Positions 2-54,583 of a stretch of DNA of 64,000 bases are shown piece by piece (the first letter of the stretch is position 1; the number at the start of each line of letters is the position of its first letter). This stretch comes from Laetmonice hystrix (lineage: Eukaryota), in assembly GCA_965235115.1 (NCBI GenBank), contig OZ249440.1:21080001-21144000 (forward strand), written 5' to 3'. The position numbers and the translations under genes were made by a program. The notes below the pieces were generated by a model. The model was not told where the DNA came from and did not search any database. It was given only the letters and a program-made list of their open reading frames with translations.

Positions 2-3000
2 ACGGTGAAAGCAAACTTTGAACCCACGCCGCTCCAACTCTGGGATGAGGAAGTCAGCAACATATTCCTCATCCTCATCTGCATTGGAGACAAATACGTC
101 AAACTCTTTGTTTTCTCCGAGACATTCGTCCCTGTCCCACGGATGCCATTTAAATAGTCTAAAGATCCGCGCCTTTAGGGTAGTGAATAAATTTATCGTG
201 CTGAGCGATAAAAGGACCAGAGTTATAACAATAAGAACAGGTGTTAATATATACATTGTGACCTTGTAATCAGGAACCACAGGGTCACCACAAATAAACT
301 GGTCGTCTGGTAGGTCAACGATAACCTTGCCTCCAACCCGCTGAGGACGCATACATTTGACCTTCTCTATGTCATGGATAACAGCCCTGTGGTCCAGGAG
401 CCAGTTTTTGAAGGGTAAACTCTCACAGTCACACACCCAGTTATTTTCTCCAAGCAAAACATCAGACGGACCGAAATCTACTATCGACGTCACATTCAGC
501 AAACGCTCGAGTTTGTTGTCGTCAAGGTGGAGGCTGGTGACGTCATTGAAGGCTAGGATTACGTCAGCAGACAGCTCACTTATGTGGTTACCGCTCAGCC
601 ATAGCGTTTTGATAGAGCTATCCTGTATGTAAGGTGGAGGGGCAATGTCTGTAATATTATTGCCCTGCAAGAGAAGGTGATATTGGCATCGAAATTCTGG
701 TCGAAGTGTAGATGTTAAACAGTGCTTTAGTGTCGGCAAATTGATGGGCATATCAACTAAGTCCTTGTTCTGGCAGTCGATCGAAATATTGTTTTTCATG
801 TCGTAATAACAGCTGCAACCGGCGGGACAGTTGTTGGGAACCTCGCAGACAAACTCATTCCAACCCTCAGGGCCAGGGTGGTTACAGTTAGCCAACCGCA
901 TGATTTCTGCCATGGTGCCCGTTGGGTCGTTTTTGGCCAGTCTCTTCGCCCTCATATAATAAAAGAAGTCATTGCCATCGCAGTTTCCGGGGTTGGGTAT
1001 AAGTTTCAGTGTAAGTGCTACATCATTTCGGTGGATGTCCATATTATACCCCAGTTTATTTACATGTGTTATGTTATTGTGCCTCAGGTCCATTGTAGTA
1101 TACAAGCGATTATTCGACAGAAGTAGTTGTTTTAACGCCTTATCTTTCAGTTCCCCATACACGGCAGACTCTATGGACGAAATATAGTTGTGGTGTAAAA
1201 TAAGTTCCGTAAGTTGTTGACAGTCGCGAAATGTTCCTTCCCGGAGGACGGTGAGATTGTTGTATGAAGCATCCAGTTTCTTCAAACTGGACCACTGGGC
1301 CAAACTCACCTCAGTAAGAGCATTTCTTGTGAGGGTCAGCGCCTCAATCACACTGAAGGAAATGTTGACCTCGGTGCCAAAAATAAGTAGGAAATTATAG
1401 GCAAGTAATACTTCTGAGAACCTAGCCAAATCATGATACACTTGTGGTTCTATCCTAGTTATCATATTGTAGGACAAATCGAGGACCCTTAGAGAGTGTA
1501 AACCTGCAAAAGTGTCGTTTCTTAGGACAGTCAGCTCATTGTAACGAGCATCAAGATATTTTAAATGAAACAGGCAATTCAGGTGTAGATCTTGTAGTCT
1601 GTTGTGATAGAGATCAAGTCTACTCATATTTGACGTGTTACACGGTATACCGTCTGGAATCCCGAACGAGACTAGCTGATTATTTGTAAGTGTGATGTAA
1701 GCAATCACACCGAAGGAAATGTTGACCTCGGTGCCAAAATTAAGTAGGAAATTATAGGCAAGTAATACTTCTGAGAACCTAGCCAAATCATGATACACTT
1801 GTGGTTCTATCCTAGTTATCCTATTGTGGGACAAATCGAGGATCCTTAGAGAGTGTAAACCTGCAAAAGTGTCGTTTCTTAGGACAGTTAGCTTATTGCA
1901 ACGAGCATCAAGATATTTTAAATGAAACAGGCAATTCAGGTGTAGATCTTGTAGTCTGTTGTGATAGAGAACAAGTGTACTCATATTTGACGTGTTACAC
2001 GGTATACCGGCTGGAATCCCGAACGAGACTAGCTGATTATCTGTAAGTGTGATGTAAGCCAATGTTGATATCGAAAAGAGTTTCTGGTATGCCTGTGTCT
2101 CGATCTGGGAAATATTGTTTTGGTTGAGCAGGAGAGACCTTAAGCTGTGGAAACCCCTGAAAGAGCTGTTTGGTAGGACACTTAATCCATTGCCAGCAAC
2201 AGATAAGTACTCCAAGCTAATCATGGAACTCCAGTCCAGACCATCAAAAGAACGTAGCATGTTAAAAGACAAATCTATTTTTTGCAGACTTGGTATATTG
2301 GCCAGTTCATCGTATACAGACATGTCGATCCGCGACATTCTATTGAGGTTTAGCGATAACTGCCTCAAATGACGCAAGTGACGAAAGCTGCCATTTTTCA
2401 AGACGGATAATCTATTGTCTGATAGATCCAGGATCTCTAAATTCGACAAACAATCCAAGTTCACCCCCTGTAACTTATTACCTTGAAGCATCAGTATCCT
2501 TACGGCAATCTTTGCGCACTCGTAAGGCTCATGTATCCCAAAGGAAAAAAGGTTGTTGTGAGAAAGATCAACAGTTGTTAAAGAAGGTATTGAGAACAGC
2601 TCACGGTAGACTCCGGCTTCTATCTGAGAGATGGCGTTCCCTATAAGAGAAATATTCCGTAGGCAGTAAAACCCAGAAAAGCTGCCATTTTTCAGTATGG
2701 CTAGCCTGTTCCAAGATGCATTCAGTATGGTGACACTTGTGAGACAGCTCCAGGGGAGGTCGGAGAGGGAGTTCGCGCGAACAATTAACTCAGCCAGAGT
2801 GGTCATGTTACAAACAAATTGCGGGACCTCCTTCATGTGTATGTTGAACGCCATTCTTATTGAAGAGAAGTTGAAGCGAAGGAATTCTACCGTTCTCTGG
2901 TTGATGTATGGAACTGGATCATGGGTGCACTTAGTGATTCTCAGAACATCATTGGTAACGTCACCTTCACAATCTCCTGGCCAGAGTGACTCGGCGACAT

Positions 3001-3163
3001 CGGGCTCGACATGCCCCGTTTTTATTGACTGCTGAGTCATCCCAGGACATCCTGGTCTCACAGTTGTTCCCGAGGCAGCAATTGTCGACGCCGCCCAGAC
3101 TAAGAGAAGAATGTATTGCACCATCGAGCCAGCAATGCAGAATAATGAAGCCTTATATGCCAT
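2..3163 (-). CDS. Toll-like receptor, multiple-cysteine-cluster (protostome/Toll-type) architecture, intronless over the visible part, 3'-partial (TIR continues past position 1)
   Basis: Hand translation of the minus frame (plus-strand triplets starting at 2,5,8...) shows no stop from 3208 to 2; upstream in-frame stop at 3209-3211; ATG at 3163 (second ATG at 3124, MVQYILLLVWAASTIAA, signal-peptide-like). About 26 LxxLxLxxNxL repeats, internal cap NPGNCDG...C...C, LRRNT CPAGCSCYY, 3-4 more LRRs, LRRCT NNWVCDC...C...C, TM (MYILTPVLIVITLVLLSLSTINLF, about 185-256), then TIR start EFDVFVSNADEDEEYVADFLIPELERRGFKVCFHR. 1054 codons visible. Confidence 0.96.
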   Translation of the reverse strand, partial: MAYKASLFCIAGSMVQYILLLVWAASTIAASGTTVRPGCPGMTQQSIKTGHVEPDVAESLWPGDCEGDVTNDVLRITKCTHDPVPYINQRTVEFLRFNFSSIRMAFNIHMKEVPQFVCNMTTLAELIVRANSLSDLPWSCLTSVTILNASWNRLAILKNGSFSGFYCLRNISLIGNAISQIEAGVYRELFSIPSLTTVDLSHNNLFSFGIHEPYECAKIAVRILMLQGNKLQGVNLDCLSNLEILDLSDNRLSVLKNGSFRHLRHLRQLSLNLNRMSRIDMSVYDELANIPSLQKIDLSFNMLRSFDGLDWSSMISLEYLSVAGNGLSVLPNSSFRGFHSLRSLLLNQNNISQIETQAYQKLFSISTLAYITLTDNQLVSFGIPAGIPCNTSNMSTLVLYHNRLQDLHLNCLFHLKYLDARCNKLTVLRNDTFAGLHSLRILDLSHNRITRIEPQVYHDLARFSEVLLAYNFLLNFGTEVNISFGVIAYITLTNNQLVSFGIPDGIPCNTSNMSRLDLYHNRLQDLHLNCLFHLKYLDARYNELTVLRNDTFAGLHSLRVLDLSYNMITRIEPQVYHDLARFSEVLLAYNFLLIFGTEVNISFSVIEALTLTRNALTEVSLAQWSSLKKLDASYNNLTVLREGTFRDCQQLTELILHHNYISSIESAVYGELKDKALKQLLLSNNRLYTTMDLRHNNITHVNKLGYNMDIHRNDVALTLKLIPNPGNCDGNDFFYYMRAKRLAKNDPTGTMAEIMRLANCNHPGPEGWNEFVCEVPNNCPAGCSCYYDMKNNISIDCQNKDLVDMPINLPTLKHCLTSTLRPEFRCQYHLLLQGNNITDIAPPPYIQDSSIKTLWLSGNHISELSADVILAFNDVTSLHLDDNKLERLLNVTSIVDFGPSDVLLGENNWVCDCESLPFKNWLLDHRAVIHDIEKVKCMRPQRVGGKVIVDLPDDQFICGDPVVPDYKVTMYILTPVLIVITLVLLSLSTINLFTTLKARIFRLFKWHPWDRDECLGENKEFDVFVSNADEDEEYVADFLIPELERRGFKVCFHR
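1345..2058 (-). repeat. In-frame tandem duplication of 357 bp (119 codons, 5 LRRs) inside the TLR ectodomain
   Basis: 1345-1701 and 1702-2058 align without gaps; 12 substitutions in 357 bp (about 96.6% identity); reading frame preserved. Confidence 0.97.
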
Positions 3164-4888
3164 CTGCACTGAACCTATATGAACAGTTTGTTGGCGAGTG
3201 TGTGTGTGTCAAGTACGTAATCCGACGCGGTCGAAAATATATGGTTTTAGACGTCCTGCAATAGAAGAGAAACCTCCCAAGATATTTTCACAAGATAATA
3301 CATCCAAGGTACTATGCTGGCATTCTTAATCTAACAATGCATCAATAATATTATGTCTGTATGCCAGATGATGGATCCTTATATAGGGATTTCGAAACTA
3401 GGCAGGACTTCTATCTACTATTCCTTCTTATCAAAAACCACATACCGGCCTACCGTGACAGCAGCTATAGTCCGGTTTGATCAGTCGACGGTCTGAATCT
3501 CACTCTATATCGTGCAGTAATAGTTGATCATGTGCACAGGGCAGACACTATTTGTAGAGTAATGGGGCTCAGTCCCGGACCTGAGACTCTCTCGGTTTGG
3601 TGATACAGATGACCGTGCTCCACAACATTCGTTCTCTGTCCGTTCCCATGATGAAGCGCTCGATAAAAACGCGGACCACGCTTTGCTTTTTCCAGTTGCT
3701 TTGTTTTCCACTAATCCGCCCTCCCCCTCTAATGTAGCACTCCCATGTTCATAGGTTATCTTAGGCTGGTAACCGACAAGCTCCGTGCTGACGATCAGAA
3801 AGTAGGACAGAAAATGGCCTAGAGAAACAACACAACGGGTTGATACAAGTGTAAGATATACTTTCAAAATATTTTATTAATTTCTATATTTTTGTGTGTC
3901 ATGTTTTTCTGTATATGATACAACAAATGTTCATTTTCTACACCTGTGTAAAACTGATTGTCTTTAAACTCGCATCAATGCACCCACTATAACGCACAAG
4001 GCTAAACGTATCCAACGATGACTGAGTTCATTTAATCGCAGTGTAACTCCTTTCCAACCCTTGTTCTACCCCACCATCCCTTTCCAAATAGAAAAGAAAA
4101 TAATCAAGGTCTTGCTAAATTGCACCAGTTGAACTTTGAATTCAGTATTGAGTAGTATGACTAAAGGGACTTACAACCCCGCTCACAAAACGTTTTAAAA
4201 ACGTTTAATTCATAAATTATAACGTTCCTAAAACGTAAAGTTATCATTCTTTGCTAGCTTGGAAAGAGTGGTTTGTCCTCTTTATTCTATGACAGTGATG
4301 TATTGCAACCCAATTGGGGAAGTCTTGTATGAGATCATTGTATCATACATCTGCTGGTATAATGTCAGACACTTTGTAAATTACAAAACGACGGTTCTTT
4401 ATCAAAACCTTCTCCATGACGACACTAACTGCTGCCGTGAAATAACAAAAGGAAGGAAGTCCAACTTTCATCAAAATCGACTTATGTGTAAATTTGCATT
4501 CAGGGAAGTAAGTCCTATCTATCAATGTGTGTATTTCTGCTAAACATCCTTCTATGAAGCTATCAGTCACATGACAGAAGAATGCATGTCCATCCAACTG
4601 CACTGTAGCGACAACTTGTTTATGTCCATTTCTCGAAACTTTGGACCCAGGTTATAATTGATCTATAGCTGGCACAATTAGCTTATCTCTTCCTGTAACA
4701 GGATAAAAGGAGAATGATTACCGTAATAGATATTTATAGGAAGGACTTCTAGGTGGGCGTACATCGTGAGATAGGACCGTTATATCATGTACATACTATA
4801 TGCAGTCACATCGGCCTTACAGGGACCGCGGAATCGGGGGGATGGGTGGGGGTTGAAATTCAATCAGTGTCATATGAAACCTAATTTG

Positions 4889-5043
4889 CCCAGAACCTCA
4901 TCACCCGCCACTTTCCAAACTGGCCCGCTGTATGATTCCCAGAACCTCATCACCCGCCACTTTCCAAACTGGCCCGCTGTATGATTCCCAGAACCTCATC
5001 TCCCGCCACTTTCCAAACTGGCCCGCTGTATGATTCCCAGAAC
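4889..5043. repeat. Minisatellite, 49-bp unit, about 3.2 copies
   Basis: Unit cccagaacctcatcacccgccactttccaaactggcccgctgtatgatt; AGAAC starts at 4892, 4941, 4990, 5039. Confidence 0.93.
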
Positions 5044-7303: not shown

Positions 7304-7511
7304 CTAGCAGCCATAGTGCATATGTTGGTGCTGTTGAAAGCTTTGTAAAAGGGACGCTTGAGATGGAGGTGGCACTTTTGGTATGGAGACATCGGAGTGT
7401 ACATCGGAGTAGTTCTTTAAAATACGCTCTCTGCTGGGAGCCCCGTGGACGGGTACGCCATTCATCGGCATACCCATGCCATAACTGTGATTCATGTTCA
7501 TGTGAGGCTTT

Positions 7512-7549
<38 letters not shown>

Positions 7550-7827
7550 ATGTTGTTGCAGGGCGTGCATCTGCTGGGCCTGCAGTGGCGTGTAATGTTG
7601 GTCATGATGTTTGTCCTGGCCCGAGAGCGGCGGCACTCGGCAGTGTTGGCGGACCACCGACTTGTTTTTCTTGGCCCTCGCTCGGCGCCGTCGATGGAGC
7701 ACGTAGAAGGATATGACAACGATTAGGATGATGACAGCAGCCGGGACTGCTATGATTAAAGGCAGGGATGGCGATCTGAAGCCGTAAAAGTCGTCGTCTC
7801 GATGACCCTGCCCAACCTGCGAGGGAT
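7304..7827 (-). CDS. FGFRL1: FGFRL1 last coding exon: juxtamembrane, TM, cytoplasmic tail
   Basis: Acceptor tggacag|AT at 7828-7829; TM LPLIIAVPAAVIILIVVISFYVL followed by HRRRRARAKKNK; polyQ; KNYSDVHS; HQHMHYGC; TAG at 7304-7306. Confidence 0.93.
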
Positions 7828-10800
7828 CTGTCCACAATAGAAATGATAATCGTTATTAGAAAATGGTAAGATTCATCACACTTTGTTCGGCTCCCTGTGG
7901 GTGATTAGGACGCGTTATACCGGTTCAAGTCAACGACTATTCAAAGGATGTAATCCTAACGGCTGTCGAATTCATTCAATCAGTTAGCCAGGGGAGAAAA
8001 TGTTTGCGTCACAACTGGTTTAATATCATATTCGATTCAAAGTAAGTCGTGGAAAATCAGTTTAACTATGGTAACAAAGTGATATTATACACAATGGACC
8101 TGTGACAATCCCGGCTTTCATGTCCAACCACTGAGTGAAAAAAACATGTGTTCAAGTAATAAACTAAATATCCCTGGCTGCTGACCTCTGAGGACGGTGA
8201 GGAAGGCCTTCCTGAAGCTGTAGTATCCCATACTGTTGGCAGCCAGACATATGTACATTCCCGCGTCTTTCTCTGTCACCTTGTGGATGACAAGTTTGTT
8301 GAGGTAGGATCCGTCACGTTGAGGGTACACTTTGTCCGTCTTGAGTACCCGGAACCGGCTACCCTTGACGATGATGGTTGTGTTCGGGTTGAGAACTCGC
8401 TGGTCCGGCTCGATTAGCTTCAGCCACTAGTGTGGGGAAAACAGACGGTGTTAATATGACAGGTCACCTGGCGTGGGGGACAGGAACGGTATAATCAACA
8501 TAGGTCACCGGCCATCTTCAGCCGCTAGTGTACGGCAAACAGACGGTATTATTATAACGGGTCACCGGCCGACTTGAGGCGGTCAGAAACAACAGTCTGG
8601 CGGTCTGGACGGTAGATCAGATTGGTGCTACCTTTATAACGGCGAGTCTATATATGTTATCATAGAATGATATACTCCAAACCTGATCATTTATCCACAT
8701 GCAAAATGAAGTAACATTGTAGAGGATTTTCATTACATAGATTTACAAAGACAGGATAATATTCGTACAATTATAGAGGGTGCCTGGTATCAAGAGTGGA
8801 CGAGGAAACACGAAAGTTTTCATTTATAATTATCCGTGTAATGACATAACGCAAGGGGTAATCAACTAGGTATTTACAATTATCTTTACAATTACAAATT
8901 ATCGTATATTTAAGAATATGACGCAGACGATTATAAAGGAATATTTGTAGGAGGCAGTTTGATTTTCATGCAGTCCATGAGAGAACGTAACTCACCAAAT
9001 ATATAAAGAGGATAAAGAATTCCAAAATGCAGACAAATTGTTAGCGGGGGTTGGAAGGGTAATGCACAAGTGGATATAAGCGAGGTTTTTTGGTGGTATT
9101 TTATCATGCAGGGTTACATGAAACTATAATTATTATAAATAGGGGGTTGTTACTAATAGTAGGTACAGAAGGAAGTTAGTTGATCTCAGATGATGAAAGA
9201 TCATAATCAAGGCTTCAGGAAATGTTTCCACATAATATCTAATGCAAGCTTTACGTCATTCAACACGTAGCATTACGTTGGCGTTAAGAAATCTCGCAAA
9301 AAGTTTTAAGAGATACTCTGAATTTGTTAGAAATGTCAACCTGCATGTAAAATAATGGTATTACATTATGTAACTTAGTAACTGGTGGCCAGAGAATAAA
9401 TTTGGCCGCGGATTCGGTTTGAGAAACCACGAGTAAACCAGCGAAATACATACATGAAAACCACATAGATGGTCATAATTAATATATGAACTCTATATGA
9501 TGTGTAACATAGACAGTGAAATACAAATATAACTGCAAACAGGACAGACATTTGGTGTAAAAACTTTCACAACTGCCATGAATTGTCTACTTTTTCCTTC
9601 TAATAATGCATGTGAAAAATACTACAATACCAAAAATACGGAACACGCGTGTCCATCAATTTTTGATCTTCTTACAAACATCATGGCAGTTGTTAACAAA
9701 CATCATGGCAGTTGTCATGGGCAGTTGTTAACCTCCACCCAAACAGGTTAATTCGGGAGTCAACACTGTAGACCTTAATACAGAATATCCTGTGAGAATT
9801 CTGCCCTCGTTTGTAGGCCTACAGTCCTTGAATCCCGAGGATTTGGGTGAAGGCTCAAAGTTCATTATGTCACGGCACACCAAGGGGTCAACAGTACTGG
9901 TTATACTCCCTTAGTGTCACGCATGGCTTGCCCCGCCCAGTCCTTACACGGGACCCACAGATACTAATTGATAATACAAAGCTTACAATACGTATCTTTA
10001 CTGTTTATAGCGGTACTCTGCTAAACCCTATTGGTTTAATACTGTGACCGTTAGCTCACGCGTGACAACAAGGGTGAATAGACAGCGCTAAACGGAGGCT
10101 CGTAAATACAGTGTTTTGCTCAGCCACAGCCACAGCCACTAGGGGGAGTTGTAGTCAACAGTCAACCAGCAATCTTCGTATTATTGGTGCTGCAGAGGCG
10201 GTAGAAAACTAGAGCGCCATCTAGTGCAAGTGTCGGAGTTGGAGGGATACAACTTGTACCTGTATGTGAGGCTGAGTTTCACTCTTCACTTTGCACTGAA
10301 AGGAAGCCACGCCCCCCTGCAGGGCGGTGCTGTTTTCTGGGTGAGGCGCCACCAGCAATGGCTTTGAATGAATCTGGTCTGCAAAAAATGGCAAAAGGCG
10401 ATTACAGTATAGTCTAAAAACACGGAGCTCACCTTGACGGTTGGGGCGACTTCAGACTGGATGTCACATTGGAAGGCGGCTACATCGCCATAGCTGGCAG
10501 TGGCGTTCACAGGTTGGGACTTAATGAGAGGTTTTGTGTACATGTCTGCAAAAATTGTCAGGTGGTACATGCACAGAAGAGAAAACTCACAAAAACACCA
10601 CTAGGCGTACAATGTAGAAAACCAATCAGAACCCGTACAGAAATAACAAATATACAAATATTTAATCAAATTAGGTTCCTTTCAGGGTGCCAACAGAGAA
10701 AACAGCGCACATAATAATTGTCAGCGCTTTAATTGAAATACTACCCAAGAAGTCAATACGAACATAACGAACATAACGAGCTTAGACATGTACACACACA

Positions 10801-13800
10801 GATTTTCACCCACATACTCCTTGAACCCACATTAAGGCAATATATTTCTAATTTAGGATTTTCACTGAAACCTGAAGAAATACGTGTGATGTGTAGTAAA
10901 TACTGTGCGCCCGTCCAAGCACACAGTGTGGGTTGGGGAGAGTCTGAGTTGTGATTGAAGTATAGCTATCCACCACTTACCGACCACGTCGACCGTGTAG
11001 GTAAAGTTGATGGCTCCAGCATGGTTGACAACCTTACACGTGTAATGTCCACTGTCCTCTCTCTGAAGGTTATGTAACCTCAGAGTCCAGTGTTGATGAC
11101 GGGACGTCTCGCCGTCCGAGTTGGCCACAACGTTACCATCCTTGAACCAGATGATGGAGGGCGGTGGGTCACCCCCGGCCTTACATTTCAACCGGAGAGC
11201 CGAGCCGACCGGTTTCTCGATTGGTTCCTGCTTCATCTGGTCCATCCGCAGGAAATGAGGCGGCGCTGTGACAACAATAAAATCTACATCACTCAATTGT
11301 TTCCACACAAACCCCTCTAATAACCGGGCAAGATTAATTTAGCATCAAAATAAAACGATCAGCGGAATCCTTATCAGGGTTAGAGAATTTCACTTTTATT
11401 TTTGGGAGGTTGGCGGTTGAAGGATTTTGGGGTATCCTGGTATAGGCACAAATCATAAGCCCCTCCTTATGGCACATACAGTGCAGTTTGTAAACCAGTG
11501 GCATCAACAGGAGGACATTTTATCCATAACAATATAACTTCCCATAGTGAAAGACCTTTTGATATCTTAGATCTGTTGTGGTTCACTCACAAAACTCACC
11601 TCCATCTTCTGGGTAAAGGTTCCCCTCCAAACCAAAAGGTGGCGTTACTGTGTCATTCGTGTCGGCTGTAAATAGACAAACCCAGACATTGAGTGGTGAT
11701 ATAGACATTATGACAAATGCGATCAAATCAAACCTCTCCTCACGATTGGAAATGTTCTGTTCCGTTTACCACCACAAGTAAATTAATAACACTGCAATCG
11801 GCCCACATCTCAGTCTCCGTGTTACAAACATTACACTATAGGGGGCGCTACCATCATACCATCTCCCTGTAAACTCACGCCCGTCCATTCGCTAAATACT
11901 ATATGCCAGGTCTCAGGCCTACTAAGAATCTATATGATCTTTAAAAAAATCCGTTCATGTATAGATCGATATGTAAGTAAGCCTAGCCTATATTCTTGCC
12001 AAGACCCTGCACTACACTGTGGTGTAGTTTACTAATCATCATGAGAGCCTCCGACTTGGCCGAATCGCCTCTTACAGTAGTGACTAATACTGTCACCAGG
12101 TGTCACACAGTTCTCGCTCCACTCACACTCTGACCCTCAGGTCTGAGCGTGGGATTACCCCCTAAGTTGGCCCATTGTTTATTATCTGAGAAAGCAGCAC
12201 GATGAGCCGCCAGTGATGGGATGGGTTATGTATGGAATCCTATCTCTGATCAATCCACCAATGCCTCCATCAGTGCCCGACATGGGATCTTACGTAAATA
12301 TGCACGTGGTGCTGATCAGGCGGTGGGGACGCGCCGTCATGACGTAAGTCACCATCGGGACGCTATCTCCAGCCGGGGGGGAGGGGGGGACGGGGTTGAG
12401 GGTGAGACCAACAAGGCCTTTCACAAACATAACACCGGATGGGGGCGGGCACATTGGTTAATCACAAAGCCCCCTTTATTAAATGAAATACCCCTGACTT
12501 CCCGTCTCCTGCAGCAAGCAGGCCCCACTCCTGACCCCAAAAAGGATAATACGTCGATTGTTACGTCACAGAGGCTACCCTATCTACACAGATTGGATTA
12601 CGGCTGCCGTCTATCTACTATCACTTCATCCAGGCTGGAACCAAAGTGTTTTCATTTCGATAATCAGATAAAGTTAGATGGCATCCGCACGTCAAGCTCT
12701 GCCAGCTTTATATATCAAACCCAATGTTCTGACTTCCTGTGATAGCAGAGACCTCTCCACAGGCAGGCAGTTGCTATGGTAATAGAGATAAACAAATAAA
12801 TGCCACCCCCAGTTTGGCCAGCAATGTTTATATGGTTAACTTGGGAGTTTGGCCACTGAAAGGGCCTAACCAGTTCGTTAGCATGGACGGAGGCGGAATG
12901 CACCGTTTGACCTCCGGAATTACGCCAACCGACATTTCAATCCCACATTTCATTACTTATTCAACTACAACAAAATACAACCGTTATTATAATATTATTC
13001 TCAGGTCTCGTTGGAGAGTACCACTCAACAACGTCTGGCCACTTTAACACAAGGAGCCTTGGACCGGGTCACTCTCAAACGTCTGTGAGAACTCACTCCA
13101 CTCGGGTAAACATCCGGGCCTTTTTACGCCCCTTATTTCTGTCTTATGTGCTAAAAATGACATTTTTAGACAATATGAACATGTATGACCACAACTCGAC
13201 TTGTATTTACTGATGATCAATATCAGTTAAATGTCACGTTAAAATGTCATCCCAACAAGAACTCGGTGTGAGTCCAACCGACGCATACATCCCCTGTTTC
13301 TCTCCAGGTGGCGCTCCATGCTCCGTCCACCAACGTTTCCCAGTCCTTTCAACCCAGGATCCATTCAGTCACTCACTCACAGATAACCCAGGATCCATTC
13401 AGTCACTCACTCACAGATAACCCAGGATCCATTCAGTCACTCACTCACAGATAACCCAGGATCCATTCAGTCACTCACTCACAGATAACCCAGGATCCAT
13501 TCAGTCACTCACTCACAGATAACCCAGGATCCATTCAGTCACTTACTCACAGATAACCCAGGATCCATTCAGTCACTCACTCACAGATAACCCATTATCC
13601 ATTCAGTCACTCACTCACAGATAACCCAGGATCCATTCAGTCACTCACTCACAGATAACCCAGGATCCATTCAGTCACTCACTCACAGATAACCCAGGAT
13701 CCATTAAGTCACTCACTCACAGATAACCGGACCTCCTTCCTTTCTACCTACTTCTCCAGCTGCCAGACACTTGCACTCATAATCTTCTTCCCTTTCCCGG

Positions 13801-16800
13801 CCTTGGAAAAATAAATCTGCCTCTCCGTGTAATGTAAACATATAAATTTATGTTTACCATTGCGCGGCCAAAGGTGGCCCTATCTTATGATGAGTGTCAG
13901 AACATCCCCTGTCTGTGTACATAAAGAGACATGACGAACTCACACAGTCCTGTTTGTACAAAGACAAGTGCGCACAACATGTATCCACTTTCAGGAAGTC
14001 ATATGTACATCGCTGGGGTGTTATTTTTCTCTCTTTTTTTATAAGTGCTATTGACACAAAACGCGATTAAACAAGGCAGTTTGGATTAGATTTTAGACTC
14101 GACAAACAATCCTTAGATACCTTGAAAGTCATAACGATTATTTAAATCACGTCAGTGTCAAGAGTTAGGTTTTATTGTCTCATCTGTACTACAAGACACT
14201 TTCTTTAACCCCCTTCTATTATTGTAGTCTAAAACCACTCTCCTACTCTTTGGGTCTGTCTCTTGCTACAATGGGAAAGATACATGAACTAGCTTCAACA
14301 TTTCCCTCTCTTTATGGATTGAAACGGCCGACAACATCCCCGCAATAGAAAACTCAAGGCATCTCCGACTCATTTATCATGCATAGGAACAGCAGATGGT
14401 GGTCCACCGTTTGCCAAGCCAAACTTCGGTTCGAACCTGTTGCCAAGCACTCCAGTGGGCGTTGTGCCTGTCAGCGGCTGCCAGCAGTGCCCAAACAGTA
14501 GTGTGTGTGGGTGTCAAGGTGAAGATCTGCAGGTGGCTGCCATGTCGCCGGACGGACGGGAGCAGACAGCCCGGTAACCGGAGTATCCGGCAGGAACCTC
14601 CTGTCCACCTGTCCGCCCGGTTACAGGTGGAGTCTGCTGCCCTCCCACCGCCGCCATCCTGTCTATACCTACCGTCAGAAAGGGCATGGGGGAGGGACAG
14701 ATCATTCACTCTACCGAGACTCCAAGTCACCAGGGGCGGGCAGCAGTCATTCCCGGTAATTACGGCGAAATCAGCGAATTTTACAACGTGTTTCAGTTCA
14801 ACCAGAAATGTACTGATGAGTTTGGTCTGATTCGTCAACACTTTCCCCATGGACACCTCCGTGAACATAAACTTCCTCTTGACAACATACCTAACCCGAA
14901 CTCGGGCGTCGGACCCGTCGGACACCAGGCTTTCATGTAAATCACACAGCTCTGAGTGTTTACAACGTGTGATAATATTTAACGTTTAAGTGAGAAACGT
15001 TTAATATTCCAGTCAAGTGTAAGGTTCACCAAGAGGGCAAGAACCATGCTCAGGCGTACCTACTGCTGAAGGCAATACAAATTTCCGACACAGTGTTTGG
15101 GCAGGCATTATGTCTACGTGTTAAACATGTTGGGTTGTTTAACCACGTGAAATCGTCGGACAGGTCTGACCACAGACAGCGGGAATATTTGTGCACCCAT
15201 CTCGTCTTGGTTCCATCAATCAAGTTTCCATAGTTTACTTCATTACTTCCTCTGTCTGGTCAAACACGGCGCTCGCCCGCCTTCCTCATTGGATTGCCGA
15301 GTTCATTGTCCGCGATGATTCAGTAATAGCTTTCCGCTCCGCATAACCCAGATTCTATTTGAACGTGGCTGCCAGAAAGGCGGCGTGTGTGGAAGTCCGA
15401 CTGCTGCTCGTATTGAGGCTGATAATGAAACATAAACACCCACAGGTTTTGCAGCTGGCTTTCTATGGATCAACCACAACAAAACACTTGCGAAACAATC
15501 AACGTCAAACCAAGAGAGCGACTCGAGGACGGACTCGCAAGGATCTAGTGCCGCGCCCTTTATGGTTGGACGGGCCTTCACACTCTGATTGGGTCTGCCC
15601 GGGATCTTTGGTCAGCCTGAAGCCACAAAACATACTTTGAACCAGGTGAACTGCTTCACAGCTCCATCTACAAACACACCTGCATGTGCTTCAAATTTGA
15701 AAGAGTTTGACTGAAATGCTGAGATTTCAGTCAGCTGAATTTGGTCTTTGTTGTAGTCATAGGAAAATGATCCCGCTGACCGACCATCCTTGTCTATGAT
15801 AGTTCTTTTCATAATAAAAGAAAATCCAACGATTAGAACCAAGTCTCCAAAAGTCCTCTACCATGTGGTAGGCTATGTAGGGACTATGTTGTAATGTAGT
15901 GTTGAGATTGACCTGGCGTATTGCAACGTTACTAAGATGAGAGGCTCTCCCGGCATGGCAGGACAGGATACGACAGCATAACGAGGCCTTGCCAGGTGGA
16001 ACCCTACATACAAATCCGCGATTCCCTTTTTCAATCCAAAATTCAGTCCATTTTGCATTTAGAGCCGACGGTCAGGTGTCAATCATATCGGGCATTGTGA
16101 AATGAGGTCCTGTCATCGACACACTCCTATCTGAGATGTAGGCCTACTGGACACGAGCCGCAAGTCGTATACACAGCTTTATATAGGCCTACTCCTAGTC
16201 GGAGAGGACATCATCAGGCCAATGTGAACGGTCCCTCGGAGAGGCTGGGCTAATCTTAATCCCTTCAATGTGACCACTTTCACTCGAGCCACCCGTCCAA
16301 CCACAGCCGACTAGCCCCCCCCCCCCCCCCCCGAATCATCACCTAAAGTAATGCTCACATTGACACTACCAACGTCGGCGTAAAAAGACTGTATTGGGTG
16401 GTGAGATGAGCTGTTAACAGTGAAGTCGACCATACAGCTGGCGTGACTCAGTCTGTCGGTTGTCTATCGTCACCTGGCCAGCCTACACAAACATACCCCA
16501 CACCCCGGGCCCACACAAACCGTACCCCGGGGGGAAGAGGGCCCAGCTCCGGCAGGAATCCTCCAATAACGGCCCTTTTGTCAGCCACAACCGTTTCATT
16601 TACAGCCACCGGGAATATGGCTACTGTGGGCCATTGTGCCGTTCTATATCTCACCATCCATGTCCCCGTTCTGTCGTGTCGTTACCACCTGAAGGGTAAA
16701 GACATTCTGCCTTACTGTGGGCCAGGCAGAGTCTGCCTTACTGTGGGCCAGGCAGAGTCTGCCTTACTGTGGGCCAGGCAGTCTGCCTTACTGTGGGCCA

Positions 16801-19800
16801 GGCAGAGTCTGCCTTACTGTGGGCCAGGCAGAGTCTGCCTTACTGTGGGCCAGGCAGAGTCTGCCTTACTGTGGGCCAGGCAGTCTGCCTTACTGTGGGC
16901 CAGGCAGAGTCTGCCTTACTGTGGGCCAGGCAGAGTCTGCCTTACTGTGGGCCAGGCAGAGTCTGCCTTACTGTGGGCCAGGCAGAGTCTGCCTTACTGT
17001 GGGCCAGGCAGAGTCTGCCTTACTGTGGGCCAGGCAGTCTGCCTTACTGTGGGCCAGGCAGAGTCTGCCTTACTGTGGGCCAGGCAGAGTCTGCCTTACT
17101 GTGGGCCAGGCAGAGTCTGCCTTACTGTGGGCCAGGCAGAGTCTGCCTTACTGTGGGCTAGGCAGGATTCGTCTGGTGGTCAGGACGGCAGTTAGAACGG
17201 GTCGCTGCAGGTCCATGGAGAGGTGCTCCCGGTCAAGAGAGATGTACATTTTTCACGACATATTGTTAGACAAATTTATCAACAGCACAACTCTCTTGAT
17301 GCTGGAGGGTGAGGCAGTCGTGTCAACCTCACTCAATAAAGCGCTACCAGCCAGCAAGAGAGGCCTCTCAGTCTTTAACCGTACAAAGATGAATGAAGCA
17401 GTATCACATCTCCCAAAAGAGAGATATATGTATTCCCATCGGAAAGAGCGTTGTATCAAAAGGCAACCTATACTTCTCTGTCGACATTATTCTAAACTTT
17501 AAGATCAAAGACAAATAATTATTGTAAGGCTTACAAATTGATGCCGATCTCATTTGATCTACTACAAAATGTCATTCCAACACAAAAATGCATTTCATTC
17601 AACAGTCACATTATCATTATTATCCTGTGTCCGAACATGTGTTTGAGTATTCCAGTAAAAGTACTGATATCACCCATTAATGTAAATCTGCTTCTGTTGA
17701 TTTTATGACTCATAAATTATGTATCTAACTACAAAGGATATGCATGAAAACCTTTCGTCAGTGGTGCATTCAGTGTGAAGTCCGCCCCCCGAGCTACCAC
17801 TGCTCTGCTTACCGAGGAGAAAAACGGGCCAGTTTATCACGCCAATCTCAGCGTGATTCATATCAAGATTTCACACCTTGATAAAGCAGATAATACACCA
17901 GATAATGAAGATCACAGGAATCCATAATCATACGTTTTACGGCCTAATCCCTTTGATAATCACCTGTGATCCTACCTCGTCAATAGGCACAAAAAGGCTC
18001 CCGTCTGAGCTGAAAGGGTGCAGGGCGCATGGGGTGGTGATGGGCGTAGGACTGGCGGGGGTTGCTGCTTTGTCTGGGAAGATTCATGGTTTTGTGGCGG
18101 AGTTGTTCCCATGTTTTGAAATGAATACTCATGCAGGTCTGTGGTTTGGTTTGTGATGTGGACAAGGTACCTTCGGATCAATTTATGTATTGTCGTTTGT
18201 TTTTTTAATAGAAAAAGGGGGAGTAAAGTGAAACCAAACAAAGTAGATCAAAAAAACTTAACCCCATAAAAAGAACGGTTCAAGCCAAGGATTCAACTAT
18301 ACCTTGTCCAAAGGCCATATAAACTGTTGACTATTCTGCCCTTCCTCTATGCTCAATATTGGCCGAATCAAAATACTATCAAAATATTATGTTGCTTTCT
18401 TTAGTTTCCCTGATGATCTAGTCATCTTTGTACAGGGTGATCCAAATAAAGTCATCATTGTACAGGGTGATCCAAACAAAGTCATCATTGTACAGGATGA
18501 TTCAAATAAAGTCATCATTGTACAAGGTGATCCGAATAAAGTCATCATTGTACAGGGTGATGCAAATATTTCGAGTTCTCCTACGTGTATTTATCCCATC
18601 ATAAGGTACCGTTCTCCCTGACAAGCTGACGAGTCTGTGAAGTCTGTACCTGTAACACAACCCGGCATAAATCGGCCGCAATCACTGCCACATGTGGTGG
18701 TCACAACAATAACAGACCGCTGGCTGACCTGTCCGACCCCCGGGCCAACCCAAACACGCCGGCCTGGCCGCTCCAACTGTACAAACCGGGGCACCGGTCG
18801 CACCGACCGGCCCAACGTTTGCACAGGTTTTTCTTGTTAGTTGTCAATGTGGTTTAAACAGCTACCTGTAAGGTAATGGCCTGGCTGATGTTGATGAAGT
18901 AGCAGAACCAGTTGATCCGCGCCAATTAACGGTAGATTCGGATTCTAACTACTATACATCGGGTCAGGATATGGAGAACCCTTCATTTTCACCCCCCTAC
19001 TCTATATACTGCTATATACCGCACCCATTTATTGATGTTATCAAATATGTCCGACTATGACATCAGAAGATTCTCTCCCGCAGTCCGTTTTATACAGATG
19101 AGAAGAGGCATGTTTTCCGACAAACAACTTGAAGCGCTCTCATACCGAGCGGCGCCTGATTCAGGGCGGTCCACTCAACCCCTGTGGTGATTCCCCAATC
19201 ATCAGGATCGTGTCTGATCCTACCATACTTACACTTCACTCGGAGGCTTCACTCATAGAAACCAATCACAGTTATCTAATTCACTGCGCCAACAGATCTA
19301 AACATTTTATCAGTAAAATGGGTCTGCCTGAGGAGGTCAGCGCTGTGCCTCCAAATTGTGTAAATAAGACATCTGCCTGCTTGGAGGCAATATCAAGAGA
19401 TTCCGATGGTTATCTGGCTGAACTCAATCTGCACAGACTCTCTCTCTCTCTCTCTCTCTCTCTCTTTACTATTTGCTGCCATTCAATAAAGACGAGCTTT
19501 ACAAATGACATTCTCGCTATGAATCGGGCCAATCTGGGTAAAATTCGCCGATTTTTAATTCTAGTGTTGCCGCCCTGAATGAGTGTAAAGAATTTTACAT
19601 TTTACATTCCCTCATCATATCACAGAAAGATGATAACAGATAACAGCCACATAAGCTGATAAAGAACACAGTACAAAAGAAGACCGATACCTCAGGAACC
19701 ATATAAAAGACCAAGCCTTTATATGATCACAGCCAACAGAACAAGGGCCAATCCCATGGTCTATTCCCACCTTGTTTTAATATCAACCTTACTGGTAAAT

Positions 19801-22800
19801 TAGGTTCTTGATTATCAAACAATCTGATGGAATTGATAGTCTATACAAGTCTATCTCCGGGGTCTGTAATAATGAATGGGACCTACTCGGACATAACTCC
19901 TACCCCTCCCCTAGCTGTCTACATATCTACTACATTAAGACTCCATTGAATCCACGACTCGCTTTGACTTGAACAACTTCACAAAGTGTTGGGTTACGGT
20001 CCGTGAATTCTCATGTACGTACATATTCTGGGTGGTCACCAAGTTTTACAGAACACATTCTGACCTTGCAGCACAACTTTTTATTACAGACGACTGTCTT
20101 TATACCGTTTCCTTGATGTCAGAATGGCTTTCAACTTACGAATTCACTTACATACGAAATTCGATTAAAATAATTATAATCACGGAACTAGATCATCCAT
20201 TTCCTAACTGTCACATAAACTACATAAACTAAACAAACACAGGCGTCACATAGAAACTAGGAATTAAAGAAAATCACTTCCTATGACAAAAAGTCTTTCA
20301 TCCTCACAATTCAGAAATTACTCTTGAGTGATATTTCACCCTTTCCAGTACGAAATACAGGGGACAAATGCAGATGTCTGTGCCCACATCAAAGGGCTGC
20401 CAGTGTCGTAGGTCAGCATACAGTGGCAGTCAGGTTGAGCGATCGACATGAGTTATACGAGTGTAAAACCCACACACTGGTATTACAAAGTGGTCGTCGG
20501 AGCAGTGACGGGCGGGGAGTATACGACGACCCCAAGGTAAGTGTGTGACAGACTCATCAGTCACCAGCGGGGCCATCCCAGCCCGGACCCAACCCGGCCC
20601 GGACCCGGCCCGGGAAGGTGACACACACAGACGTCCCGTCACGGTCCGGTGACCTCTCAATGACACGCTTCAGACGTCAGTTGATCCTACCACCCAACCT
20701 CTCTCCCCGGTCAATGAAATCTACGAATCCTTTCCATTAATACGGCGACGTTACAATTTGCTCACACCCTCTACCGTGATGACTTCATGATGACGATCAA
20801 AGAGACATTCTGTTATCAGATACAACGGGGTAATACACCCTCTCCCTTCACCTACTTCATTGTGGAAGGTTTAGCTTTCCACCCATCTGGAGGTCCGCCC
20901 ACCTATAGCGGTCCAGCCATCTAGAGGTCCATCCTTCTAGAGGTCTAGCCACCCATCTACAGGATCCCCTATCAAGAGGTCCATCCACCCAAAGGTCCGC
21001 CCACCTAGAGGTCCAGTCACCCGGAAGGCCTCCCATCTAGAGGTCCATCCTTCTAGAGGTCCAGACACCCATCTACAGGATCCCCTATCAAGAGGTCCAT
21101 CCACCCAGAGGTCCGCCCACCTAGAGGTCCAGTCACCCGGAAGGCCTCCCATCTAGAGGCCCCTTTGAGATGTCCAACTTGACCTGCTGCACCCAGGTCA
21201 AAGCGAGGATGTCATCCCCACCATGACAGGCAATGATAACTAGCCTTAAGTCTCCATAGCTTACCATTTTGACTCGTCTATGAGATATGGTAATGGGTCA
21301 TACTTCCTGCTGACTACGACCTCCGCCATTACCCATGAAGCTATCAAACAACTCGTAAGCTAGGAAAACCTTTAATGGGGTAGAATTGGCTCCTCAGCCA
21401 GTTATGCTACTTTTCAGATATTATCCGCCGGAACACTTTGCCTTTTATGACGCGGAAAATAAAGGCTCTCGGGAAATGTTCCACTAAACTACGGAAGAAC
21501 GACTGAGGAAGTCAGGGGGAGCCATCTGACAGCGATAAGTTGGTACTCTGGGGCATCACCTCGGCCCAGTCGGCCCAGGGCGTACGCCAGGGAGGCTGGG
21601 GTGGGGATTGACATGATTATGATCATTTAAACGAGTCACACACTACAGTGATATTGTCCGAAAATATCTCTCACATGTCTCCAAATATCACAGTGACTTG
21701 TACACCAACCGACGAGCTAAAATTCTGGCCACCTGTTCCACATGTGTATATGAACGGCCTTTTCGGGTCAGTATAACCTTTACTGATTGTTACTGGACAG
21801 ACTGGAAGCAATACAATAGTTCCAGATATAGAACCCGTCAGCTTCCTGCAATCCTATCTCTACTGACAAATTTTAAAATGTCAGCATATTTTGCACATTT
21901 CATCAAGAGAAAGATGGCGACAGTGAAGTCCTGCAGCGAACAAAGAGCCACAGCTGCAGCGACTGACGTAGTGAAACCCAATTATCTCCATCCTCAGGGA
22001 CTTCTCCATTGAGGACGCGTTTCCTAATCTGAAGCTGGTTTCGGTTGGTGGTAGTCACCCGTTTCTTAGCCACTACCACCCTCCACTTCCCACGCAGACT
22101 TTGTTACAGTAAGACGACACTCGCTGCAGGCAATGCTCTGTTTGTCAACCACACAAACCAAGCTCTCCATCAAGCTGCTCCAAGCTGCACCAAGTCCAAG
22201 CAATGAATCCCAACTTGCTTAGAGCAAACAAATTATGTTTCTTGTCCAAACTCCAGCAGATCTATCCCATGACTGTCTATTATTCCACAAGGTCTGGCTC
22301 TATCAACGTAAGAGATCTGTGAGCCGAGTTTCCCCATGTGTCTAACAGGTGGTAGGTAAGTCATCTGGTTATCAATGTTTCACCACTGTAGATTATACTC
22401 CTAGGATCCTGCAGTAGCAGTCATCTGGTTATCAATGTTTCACCACTGTAGATTATACCCCTAGGATCCTGCAGTAGCAGTCATCTGGTTATCAATGTTT
22501 CACCACTGTAGATTATACCCTTAGGATCCTGCAGTAGCAGTCATCTGGTTACCAATGTTTCCCCACTGTAGATTATACTCCTAGGATCCTGCAGTAGCAG
22601 TCATCTGGTTACCAATGTTTCCCCACTGTAGATTATACTCCTAGGATCCTGCAGTAGCAGTCATCTGGTTACCAATGTTTCACCACTGTAGATTATACTC
22701 CTAGGATCCTGCAGTAGCAGTCATCTGGTTACCAATGTTTCACCACTGTAGATTATACTCCTAGGATCCTGCAGTAGCAGTCATCTGGTTATCAATGTTT

Positions 22801-54428: not shown

Positions 54429-54583
54429 NNNNNNNNNNNNNNNNNNNNNNNNNNNNNNNNNNNNNNNNNNNNNNNNNNNNNNNNNNNNNNNNNNNNNNNN
54501 NNNNNNNNNNNNNNNNNNNNNNNNNNNNNNNNNNNNNNNNNNNNNNNNNNNNNNNNNNNNNNNNNNNNNNNNNNNNNNNNNNN
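54429..54583. other. Assembly gap (155 N)
   Basis: Run of N. Confidence 0.99.

What the first reader, a model, noticed from the sequence alone, without database searches (positions are those of the whole stretch)
1345..2058. Recent in-frame 5-LRR duplication in the TLR diversifying at ligand-facing residues
Seen: two 357-bp copies differ at 12 sites; 11 change the amino acid and 1 is silent. Eight of the 11 fall on variable x positions of the LxxLxLxxNxL motif: MSTLVLYHN vs MSRLDLYHN, LDARCNKL vs LDARYNEL, LRILDLSHNRI vs LRVLDLSYNMI, TLTDNQL vs TLTNNQL. Those positions are only about 30 of 119 residues. Established: these positions form the concave beta-sheet and adjacent loop that bind ligand in LRR receptors. 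Inference: ectodomain expansion followed by diversifying selection on recognition specificity. 11/12 alone is not clearly above neutral expectation (about 9/12); the positional clustering is the stronger signal.
Basis: partly seen in the sequence, partly recalled or inferred. Interest (0 to 1): 0.72.

Follow-up and report, generated by a model that had tools for sequence, protein, structure and literature searches.

The report
Young five-LRR duplication inside a Toll-like receptor
An intact invertebrate Toll-like receptor gene carries a real, recent, in-frame tandem copy of five leucine-rich repeats, and the copies differ mostly at exposed repeat positions; this fast-evolving pattern is already known from expanded immune-receptor families.

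Summary
Window 1345-1701 and 1702-2058 are two 357-bp head-to-tail copies with 12 differences: 11 replacement, 1 silent. Eight of the 11 lie on the 30 variable x positions of five LxxLxLxxNxL motifs.

They sit in an uninterrupted 1206-aa minus-strand ORF with signal peptide, 25 N-terminal LRRs, an internal cysteine cluster, more LRRs, a TM helix and a TIR domain. This is a protostome-type (multiple-cysteine-cluster) TLR.

Read-derived contigs from two runs of one sample contain the copy-to-copy junction, so it is not an assembler invention.

Three single-unit paralogues polarise the changes: 8 arose on the 5' copy, all replacements and 7 at x positions; 3 arose on the 3' copy. No other place in the assembly carries the 5'-copy states, so no gene-conversion donor is visible.

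Whole-unit dN/dS of 3.35 is not significant (P=0.20). A codon model partitioned by LRR position gives omega about 6 at x positions on the two post-duplication branches (P=0.007).

The same regime (omega about 3, P=6e-5) holds across the rest of the N-terminal LRR domain between paralogues. The duplication is therefore one episode in family-wide diversification.

Verdict: real, interpretation largely supported, and a new member of a known kind.

The parts
2..3163 (-). Coding sequence of the focal TLR ('W'), residues 1-1054 of 1206. It is intronless. The last 152 residues (rest of TIR plus tail) lie left of the window at G000:C5:21079546-21080000.
   Evidence: Single open frame from ATG 3163 running off the window; completed from the genome. 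Pfam LRR_8 3.3e-68; TIR_2 38.3 bits and TIR 28.8 bits on the C-terminal piece.
1702..2058 (-). Copy A, the 5' copy in the gene (residues 369-488; LRRs starting at 368, 394, 415, 439, 463). It carries 8 lineage-specific replacements and no silent change.
   Evidence: Its derived states are unique in the assembly.
1345..1701 (-). Copy B, the 3' copy (residues 488-607; LRRs starting at 487, 513, 534, 558, 582). It carries 2 lineage-specific replacements and 1 silent change. One further site differs in all lineages.
1673..1770 (.). Read-supported junction. A 98-nt exact contig links the end of copy B, the 1701|1702 join, and the copy-A-specific bases at 1711 and 1740.
   Evidence: records X1:4 and X3:18: 0 other letters, k-mer depth 39.9 and 32.5, equal to W-specific single-copy pieces.
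1070..2797 (-). N-terminal LRR block (about 25 LRRs, residues 123-698), the fast-evolving part of the receptor.
   Evidence: Motif scan; omega at x positions about 3 against the paralogues.
758..997 (-). Internal cysteine cluster (LRRCT followed by LRRNT, residues 723-802) that marks the multiple-cysteine-cluster TLR type.
   Evidence: Cysteine pattern read directly from the translation. No dedicated Pfam hit.
290..445 (-). Membrane-proximal LRRCT (residues 907-958).
   Evidence: Read from the translation.
185..256 (-). Transmembrane segment (residues 970-993).
   Evidence: 24 hydrophobic residues followed by basic residues, read from the translation. No predictor was run.
2..103 (-). Start of the TIR domain (residues 1021-1054).
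3381..4432 (.). Upstream flank shared at 91.6% with the upstream flank of the neighbouring paralogue N1. It is part of the roughly 6.4-kb gene-bearing unit that was itself duplicated.
   Evidence: Self-BLAST of the locus.

Best explanation
Shown: the feature is a young tandem duplication of five complete leucine-rich repeats inside the N-terminal LRR solenoid of an intact, intronless, protostome-type Toll-like receptor. The gene belongs to a recently amplified 6.4-kb gene unit. One paralogue (N1) lies about 2.7 kb downstream in tandem (gene starts about 6 kb apart), another (N2) lies 1.2 Mb away inverted, and an older one (N3) is at 8.6 Mb. All three have a single unit.

Shown: the two parental breakpoints share only about 1 nt of identity but lie at equivalent positions of two LRRs. 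Inferred: the duplication arose by a non-homologous or microhomology event (replication slippage or template switching), and it persisted because it is in frame and in repeat register.

Shown: the copies now differ at 12 sites. Replacements are concentrated on the solvent-exposed positions of the beta strand (motif positions 3 and 5) and the loop after it (positions 8 and 10). Most are on the 5' copy, and six of the eleven replacements change charge.

Inferred: this is positive diversifying selection on the concave and ascending face, the same regime that acts on the whole N-terminal LRR domain of this small paralogue group. The lengthened and re-surfaced solenoid would alter what the receptor binds. 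That last step rests on analogy with solved LRR receptors and is not tested.
For: Repeat and codon counts.

Reality of the join: 29 junction-spanning 31-mers are assembled into an exact 98-nt contig in two runs. They are linked to copy-A-specific bases. Their depth equals that of W-specific single-copy pieces and is half that of a piece shared by both copies.

Polarity and age: with N1, N2 and N3, 8 changes fall on copy A, 3 on copy B and 1 is ambiguous. Copies A and B share derived states at unit columns 303, 310 and 311, so the duplication post-dates the split from N1/N2.

Selection on the copies: omega_x about 5.9 on the A and B branches (LRT 7.2, P=0.007) and about 5.0 over the unit tree (P=0.001). 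By counting, 8 replacements in 73 non-synonymous x sites against 1 silent change in 82 synonymous sites gives Fisher P=0.011. Against a null with neutral x positions and omega 0.35-0.45 elsewhere, P is about 0.01.

Selection in the family: outside the unit omega_x is 3.2 (LRT 16.2, P=6e-5). Omega is 0.23 at consensus L/N positions and 0.47 at the remaining LRR positions.

No conversion donor.

Structure: model pLDDT 91.5 and pTM 0.90, with regular strands at motif positions 3-5 in both copies and across the junction.

Breakpoints: 29 of 80 in-register identities, about 1 nt of microhomology.
Against: Only 12 substitutions carry the copy-specific test, and chi-square P values are approximate at such counts. 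Whole-unit dN/dS is not significant (P=0.20). The 8:3 asymmetry between copies is not significant (P=0.23). The share of replacements at x positions (73%) does not exceed the family background of 53% (P=0.15).

Only the junction and two of the twelve variable sites (1354/1711 and 1383/1740) are verified in reads. The available runs are Logan contigs of one sample, possibly the assembly's own animal. They collapse the paralogues onto a majority path, so there is no exact contig over 1846-2030.

No RNA run, no second individual and no close relative were available. No ligand is known.
Confidence: 0.6

Rival explanations
1. The differences predate the duplication. An unequal exchange or template switch between two already diverged alleles (or near-identical paralogues) of a single-unit gene joined allele 1 (upstream part plus copy A) to allele 2 (copy B plus downstream part). 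The replacement excess would then reflect standing allelic diversity, possibly under balancing selection, rather than divergence after expansion.
For: Copy B is close to the ancestral state, while copy A carries 8 of the 11 polarised changes. Divergence between this gene and N1/N2 is strongly patchy along the gene, as expected where segments are exchanged. The C-terminal half is homogenised among paralogues, with dS 0.18 against 0.4-0.6 for N3, which shows that exchange happens in this family.
Against: Both copies share three states derived relative to N1/N2 in their 3' third. The breakpoints share only about 1 nt. That argues against homologous unequal crossing-over, though not against template switching between homologues. 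The 8:3 asymmetry is not significant. No second source of the copy-A states exists in the assembly.
Confidence: 0.2
2. Relaxed constraint and chance. The x positions are simply the least constrained residues of an LRR. A redundant extra block drifts, and no adaptive change in recognition is involved.
For: Whole-unit dN/dS is not significantly above 1. In older comparisons with N3, omega at x positions is 0.6-0.75, not above 1. The share of replacements at x positions matches the family background.
Against: Neutral drift gives omega of at most 1. The partitioned model rejects omega_x=1 on the copy branches (P=0.007) and between paralogues outside the unit (P=6e-5). The ORF is intact over 1206 codons.
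Confidence: 0.1
3. Short gene-conversion tracts from other TLR paralogues imported the closely spaced changes in copy A (unit columns 82/88, 160/165, 216/231), imitating a burst of replacements.
For: The changes come in close pairs. The genome holds at least 33 TIR-bearing loci, including a 7-member subfamily. The family shows homogenised segments.
Against: None of the six other subfamily members carries any of these pairs. Genome-wide pattern searches with up to 2 mismatches find the copy-A versions only in copy A itself. Close pairs are also expected simply because x positions sit within 11 residues of each repeat.
Confidence: 0.06
4. Assembly artefact: two alleles or paralogues were stitched in tandem by the assembler.
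For: The family has 96-97% identical paralogues nearby. Read contigs give no exact cover of the middle of copy A.
Against: The join itself exists in read-derived contigs of two runs. It is physically linked to copy-A-specific bases, at the same depth as W-specific single-copy sequence. A piece common to both copies has twice that depth (60.6 against 31-33). The join is in frame and in LRR register.
Confidence: 0.04

Closest known systems
Expanded sea urchin TLR multigene families (Buckley and Rast 2012, PMC3367398)
   Same: The genes are intronless, tandemly amplified TLRs with conserved TIR domains and rapidly diverging ectodomains. Members of one subfamily differ by insertion or deletion of whole LRRs. 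Positively selected sites cluster on the concave beta strands and just beyond them.
   Different: Those are mostly single-cysteine-cluster (vertebrate-type) TLRs of a deuterostome. Here it is a multiple-cysteine-cluster TLR, and the nearest named relative is an annelid protein at only 32% identity. Here the LRR gain is caught young, as a five-repeat block with both copies still 96.6% identical and its junction defined to the base.
Lophotrochozoan (bivalve and other) TLR expansions (Saco et al. 2023, PMC10279657)
   Same: They show lineage-specific tandem duplication of TLR genes, episodic positive selection concentrated in the extracellular LRR region, and strong purifying selection on TIR.
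   Different: That work concerns whole-gene duplication and site models across families. It does not, in the passages read, describe an intragenic multi-LRR block duplication.
Plant LRR resistance genes with variable LRR number and hypervariable x residues (Cf-9/Cf-4, Cf-2/Cf-5 type; cited from my own knowledge, not checked here)
   Same: LRR copy number changes through intragenic duplication and deletion. There is a replacement excess at the solvent-exposed x residues of xxLxLxx, and both determine recognition specificity.
   Different: It is an unrelated receptor class and kingdom. There the link to specificity is experimentally shown, whereas here it is inferred.
Insect Toll receptors with solved ectodomains (Drosophila Toll-Spatzle 4LXR; Aedes Toll5A-Spz1C 7B1C)
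   Same: The overall architecture is the same: an N-terminal LRR solenoid, an internal cysteine cluster, a second LRR block, a TM segment and TIR. The modelled duplicated segment superposes on these and many other LRR solenoids (7b1c_C TM 0.69, 4lxr_A TM 0.39).
   Different: Sequence identity is only 16-20%. The best structural matches are generic LRR proteins (SHOC2, Leptospira LRR proteins), so the fold search says 'LRR solenoid' and nothing about the ligand.

Membership tests
Toll-like receptor | Extracellular leucine-rich-repeat domain | tested here: met
   Pfam LRR_8 E=3.3e-68 with 10 stretches, plus LRR_4, LRR_1 and LRR_9. About 25 + 3 LxxLxLxxNxL motifs.
Toll-like receptor | Cytoplasmic TIR domain | tested here: met
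   C-terminal 151 residues: TIR_2 38.3 bits (cut-off 28) and TIR 28.8 bits (cut-off 21.3). The paralogue N2 gives TIR_2 60.3 bits.
Toll-like receptor | Signal peptide and a single transmembrane helix between the LRR and TIR domains | tested here: met
   Read from the translation only: a hydrophobic N-terminus (residues 1-31) and a 24-residue hydrophobic segment at 970-993 followed by basic residues. No dedicated predictor was run.
Protostome-type / multiple-cysteine-cluster TLR | An LRRCT-LRRNT cysteine cluster inside the ectodomain, in addition to the membrane-proximal LRRCT | tested here: met
   Cysteine pattern at residues 723-802 (C..C....C......C, then CxxxCxC....C) and a second LRRCT at 907-958, read from the translation and conserved in N1-N3. 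No Pfam LRRCT/LRRNT hit was reported.
Recent intragenic tandem duplication | Two adjacent head-to-tail copies, in frame, with a junction present in sequencing reads | tested here: met
   The reads come from one sample only.
Recent intragenic tandem duplication | Close relatives retain a single copy, and the copies are each other's closest relatives | tested here: met
   N1, N2 and N3 each have one unit. A and B share derived states at columns 303, 310 and 311.
LRR receptor under diversifying selection at solvent-exposed residues | dN/dS above 1 at the x positions of LxxLxLxxNxL, with purifying selection on scaffold residues | tested here: met
   omega_x 5.9 on the copy branches (P=0.007) and 3.2 between paralogues outside the unit (P=6e-5). 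Omega is 0.23 at L/N positions. These come from my own implementation of a fixed-partition GY-type model, not PAML or HyPhy.
LRR receptor under diversifying selection at solvent-exposed residues | The selected residues contact a ligand | not testable with these tools
   No ligand is known. The structure tool returns secondary structure only. Positions 3 and 5 lie in the predicted strands.

The most novel reading that the evidence does not exclude
The five-LRR block is a segregating copy-number variant. Individuals of this species would then differ in the number of LRRs of the same TLR locus, with the extra block evolving under directional selection. That would be an animal counterpart of the allelic LRR-number series of plant resistance genes, giving individual-specific innate receptor repertoires. 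The single sample available neither shows nor excludes this.
Probability: 0.25. Interest if true: 0.55.

Novelty: new member of a known kind. Interest (0 to 1): 0.35.

Why it matters
The locus gives a clean, dated snapshot of how an LRR immune receptor grows. The breakpoints are defined to the base and share almost no homology. The event is in frame and in repeat register. Ancestral states can be recovered from three single-unit paralogues, and there is already a measurable replacement excess on the exposed face. That makes the locus a convenient natural experiment: one-unit and two-unit ectodomains could be compared directly. It does not change what is known. Whole-LRR gains and losses, and positive selection on the concave face, are already described for expanded invertebrate TLR families and plant LRR receptors.

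Tried and rejected
(1) A single-sequence AlphaFold run of residues 330-650 failed (pLDDT 33). It was replaced by a run with a 39-sequence LRR alignment.

(2) Protein database searches for orthologues did not help. The LRR region returned only generic LRR proteins at 22-33% identity. The TIR half returned unnamed ENA proteins at 45% or less and an annelid protein at 32%. A search sized for fragments of the two-copy region returned nothing. Cluster look-ups gave no names. No sister-species or second-individual comparison was therefore possible, and the organism is placed only loosely (a protostome, perhaps annelid-like).

(3) Reads. All four runs are Logan contigs of one sample. The longer contigs over the repeat follow the majority state of the paralogous units. 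For example, the 249-nt piece at 1454-1702 shows other letters at the copy-B-specific sites 1532 and 1653. So these contigs cannot confirm or deny ten of the twelve differences.

(4) Zygosity from depth. I first read the junction depth as one haploid dose, but the depths fit a homozygous 2:4:8 series equally well. I make no claim.

(5) The idea that copy B and everything downstream came from an N1/N2-like parent. Divergence from N1/N2 is patchy along the whole gene, and copies A and B share derived states, so it is kept only as a rival.

(6) The search for gene-conversion donors was negative.

(7) The fold search returned generic LRR solenoids only.

(8) Earlier scan notes returned only this same finding and an unrelated transposon note.

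Full report
WHAT IS THERE

The first 3.2 kb of the window hold the 5' four-fifths of an uninterrupted minus-strand reading frame. It starts at ATG 3163 and runs off the left edge. Fetching the adjoining genome sequence completes it to 1206 codons at G000:C5:21079546-21083163.

The protein has these parts:
- a hydrophobic N-terminus;
- about 25 LRRs (residues 123-698);
- an LRRCT-LRRNT cysteine cluster (723-802);
- three more LRRs and a second LRRCT (907-958);
- one hydrophobic transmembrane segment (970-993);
- a TIR domain.

Pfam gives LRR_8 at E=3e-68, and TIR_2 and TIR score above their curated cut-offs. This is the multiple-cysteine-cluster (protostome-type) Toll-like receptor architecture.

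The nearest named protein is an annelid TIR protein at 32% identity, and unnamed ENA proteins reach 45%. No orthologue from a close relative was available.

THE OBSERVATION

Tandem Repeats Finder and a lag-357 comparison agree. Window 1345-1701 (copy B, residues 488-607) and 1702-2058 (copy A, residues 369-488) are head-to-tail copies without indels. They differ at 12 bases. In frame, 11 differences are replacements and 1 is silent. Eight replacements lie on the 30 x positions (motif positions 2, 3, 5, 7, 8, 10) of the five LxxLxLxxNxL motifs in the unit.

IS THE DUPLICATION REAL?

Four public runs hold the region. All come from one sample and are kept as Logan contigs. Laid on 1000-2400, two runs each give an exact 98-nt contig over 1673-1770.

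With k=31 this is what a junction-specific unitig should look like. It begins 29 nt before the join, at the first 31-mer that must cross it. It ends 30 nt after the copy-A-specific base at 1740. It therefore links copy B's end, the join, and copy A's own variants at 1711 and 1740.

Its depth is 39.9 and 32.5 in the two runs. That equals the depth of pieces specific to this gene (43.8; 31-33). It is half the depth of a piece common to both copies (60.6).

Longer contigs over the repeat follow the majority state of the paralogous units, so they say nothing about the other ten differences. There is no exact cover of 1846-2030. The tool itself warns that such holes prove nothing. The sample may be the assembly's own, so this supports the assembly but is not independent population evidence.

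FAMILY CONTEXT AND POLARITY

The genome holds at least 33 TIR-bearing loci, and this gene belongs to a subfamily of seven. A 6.4-kb unit carrying the gene and about 1 kb of upstream flank has itself been copied:
- paralogue N1 follows about 2.7 kb downstream in tandem, with gene starts about 6 kb apart;
- N2 lies 1.2 Mb away, inverted (97.1% identical to N1);
- N3 lies at 8.6 Mb (about 81% in the unit).

All three have one unit. Using them, 8 of the 12 differences are changes on copy A. All 8 are replacements, and 7 are at x positions. Three are changes on copy B (two replacements and the silent one). One site differs in every lineage.

Copies A and B share three states derived relative to N1, N2 and N3 (unit columns 303, 310, 311). 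They are therefore sister sequences, and the duplication post-dates the split from N1/N2. dS between the copies is 0.012. It is 0.06 between this gene and N1/N2, and 0.022 between N1 and N2.

The focal gene has also lost one LRR (23 residues) and about two LRRs (about 40 residues) that N1-N3 retain. In N1 and N3 the LRR array shows a strong 98-residue (four-LRR) super-period. Block gain and loss is evidently how this ectodomain has always evolved.

MECHANISM OF THE DUPLICATION

The two parental breakpoints share about 1 nt. In-register identity around them is 29 of 80, which is background. That argues against homologous unequal crossing-over. It favours a microhomology or non-homologous event such as replication slippage or template switching; this is inference.

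At the protein level both breakpoints sit between motif positions 1 and 2 of an LRR, so the repeat register is preserved. An AlphaFold model built with a 39-sequence alignment has pLDDT 91.5 and pTM 0.90. It shows regular strands at motif positions 3-5 in both copies, and the solenoid continues through the junction. The fold search finds only generic LRR solenoids, among them Toll5A and Toll.

SELECTION

Partitioning by the a-priori LRR positions changes the picture:
- x codons: 8 replacements in 73 non-synonymous sites, no silent change;
- the 25 consensus L/N codons: 0 replacements and the one silent change;
- the other 64 codons: 3 replacements.

Set against the unit's synonymous rate, the x-site replacement rate is higher (Fisher P=0.011). 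Against a null in which x positions are neutral and the rest has the family's omega of 0.35-0.45, 8 or more of 12 changes being x-site replacements has P of about 0.01.

I wrote a fixed-partition codon likelihood model with shared branch lengths and kappa, and separate omega for x and non-x codons. On the tree ((A,B),(N1,N2)) it gives omega_x 5.0 (LRT 10.6, P=0.001). When only the A and B branches are tested it gives omega_x 5.9 against omega_non-x 0.52 (LRT 7.2, P=0.007).

The same model on the N-terminal LRR domain outside the unit (this gene, N1, N2) gives omega_x 3.2 (LRT 16.2, P=6e-5). By counting, 53% of replacements there fall on the 26% of positions that are x.

So the excess is real, but it is a property of the paralogue group. 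The duplicate's 8/11 is not more extreme than that background (P=0.15), and the 8:3 asymmetry between the copies is not significant (P=0.23). These P values rest on few events and asymptotic approximations.

ALTERNATIVES

Gene conversion: none of the other six subfamily members has the copy-A states in combination. Genome-wide pattern searches with up to two mismatches find the three copy-A-specific segments only in copy A.

Differences older than the duplication: this cannot be excluded with one genome. Exchange clearly occurs in the family. The C-terminal half is homogenised (dS to N3 is 0.18, against 0.4-0.6 in the LRR part), and divergence is patchy along the gene. The shared derived states and the non-homologous junction speak for identical copies at birth.

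Relaxed constraint alone cannot give omega above 1.

Mis-assembly is contradicted by the junction contigs.

COMPARISON WITH WHAT IS KNOWN

For sea urchin TLR families, Buckley and Rast (PMC3367398) describe subfamily members that differ by discrete insertions or deletions of complete LRRs. They also find positively selected sites clustered on the concave strands and just beyond them, with TIR conserved. Saco et al. (PMC10279657) report tandem TLR duplication and episodic positive selection in extracellular regions in bivalves and other invertebrates. From my own knowledge, plant Cf-type resistance genes show the same pairing of LRR-number change with hypervariable x residues.

The present case is a further, unusually young and well-resolved example of that known kind. 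It occurs in a multiple-cysteine-cluster TLR of a poorly sampled lineage.

VERDICT

The order of events and the link to ligand specificity remain inferences. Interest is moderate to low.

Noticed in passing
G000:C5:21073436-21076819 (N1, L002/L008/L011), G000:C5:22280597-22283980 (N2, L009:4597-7980) and window 2-4432: The whole TLR gene with about 1 kb of upstream flank is a 6.4-kb duplicated unit. The focal gene and N1 are tandem, and N2 is an inverted copy 1.2 Mb away, 97.1% identical to N1 with sharp ends.
   Followed up: partly
window 1070-2797 compared with N1/N2/N3: Relative to its three paralogues the focal gene has also lost one LRR (23 residues after residue 308) and about two LRRs (about 40 residues after residue 689). 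It has had three LRR-number changes in a short time.
   Followed up: partly
N1 and N3 proteins, residues about 110-645: The N-terminal LRR array has a strong 98-residue (four-LRR: 21+24+27+26) super-period, and also its double. This is stronger than the 24-residue LRR period and points to older block duplications. The new 119-residue unit is out of step with it.
   Followed up: partly
window 2-997 and the TIR region left of the window: The membrane-proximal ectodomain, TM and TIR are nearly identical among all four paralogues. dS to N3 is 0.18 there, against 0.4-0.6 in the N-terminal LRRs. This suggests homogenisation by gene conversion of the signalling half.
   Followed up: no
G000:C12:21.12-21.49 Mb: There is a dense cluster of at least 14 further TIR-bearing open frames of about 770 aa (short, probably single-cysteine-cluster TLRs). 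The genome has at least 33 TIR matches to this query.
   Followed up: no
G000:C5:3675272-3675919 (L005 region): A subfamily member 73% identical in the TIR half has an in-frame TAG and may be a pseudogene.
   Followed up: no
window 10865-11338 (-): An open stretch encodes an immunoglobulin I-set domain (Pfam E=4e-17). It is probably an exon of a neighbouring Ig-domain gene. A nearby open stretch at 7307-7852 (-) has a transmembrane-like segment but no Pfam hit.
   Followed up: partly
window 4889-5043, 13351-13728, 16706-17165, 22359-23318, 27237-28374, 28800-29747, 37489-38654, 41960-43844, 58761-60992, 61802-63078: The window is unusually rich in minisatellite arrays (periods 22-140 bp, up to 85 copies, 91-99% matches). 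Several give long spurious open frames of repeated peptides.
   Followed up: no
window 54429-54583: A run of 155 N (gap or masked).
   Followed up: no
window 1899 (copy A residue 422): One of the copy-A changes creates a cysteine (Y to C) at an exposed motif position 8. Six of the eleven replacements change charge.
   Followed up: no
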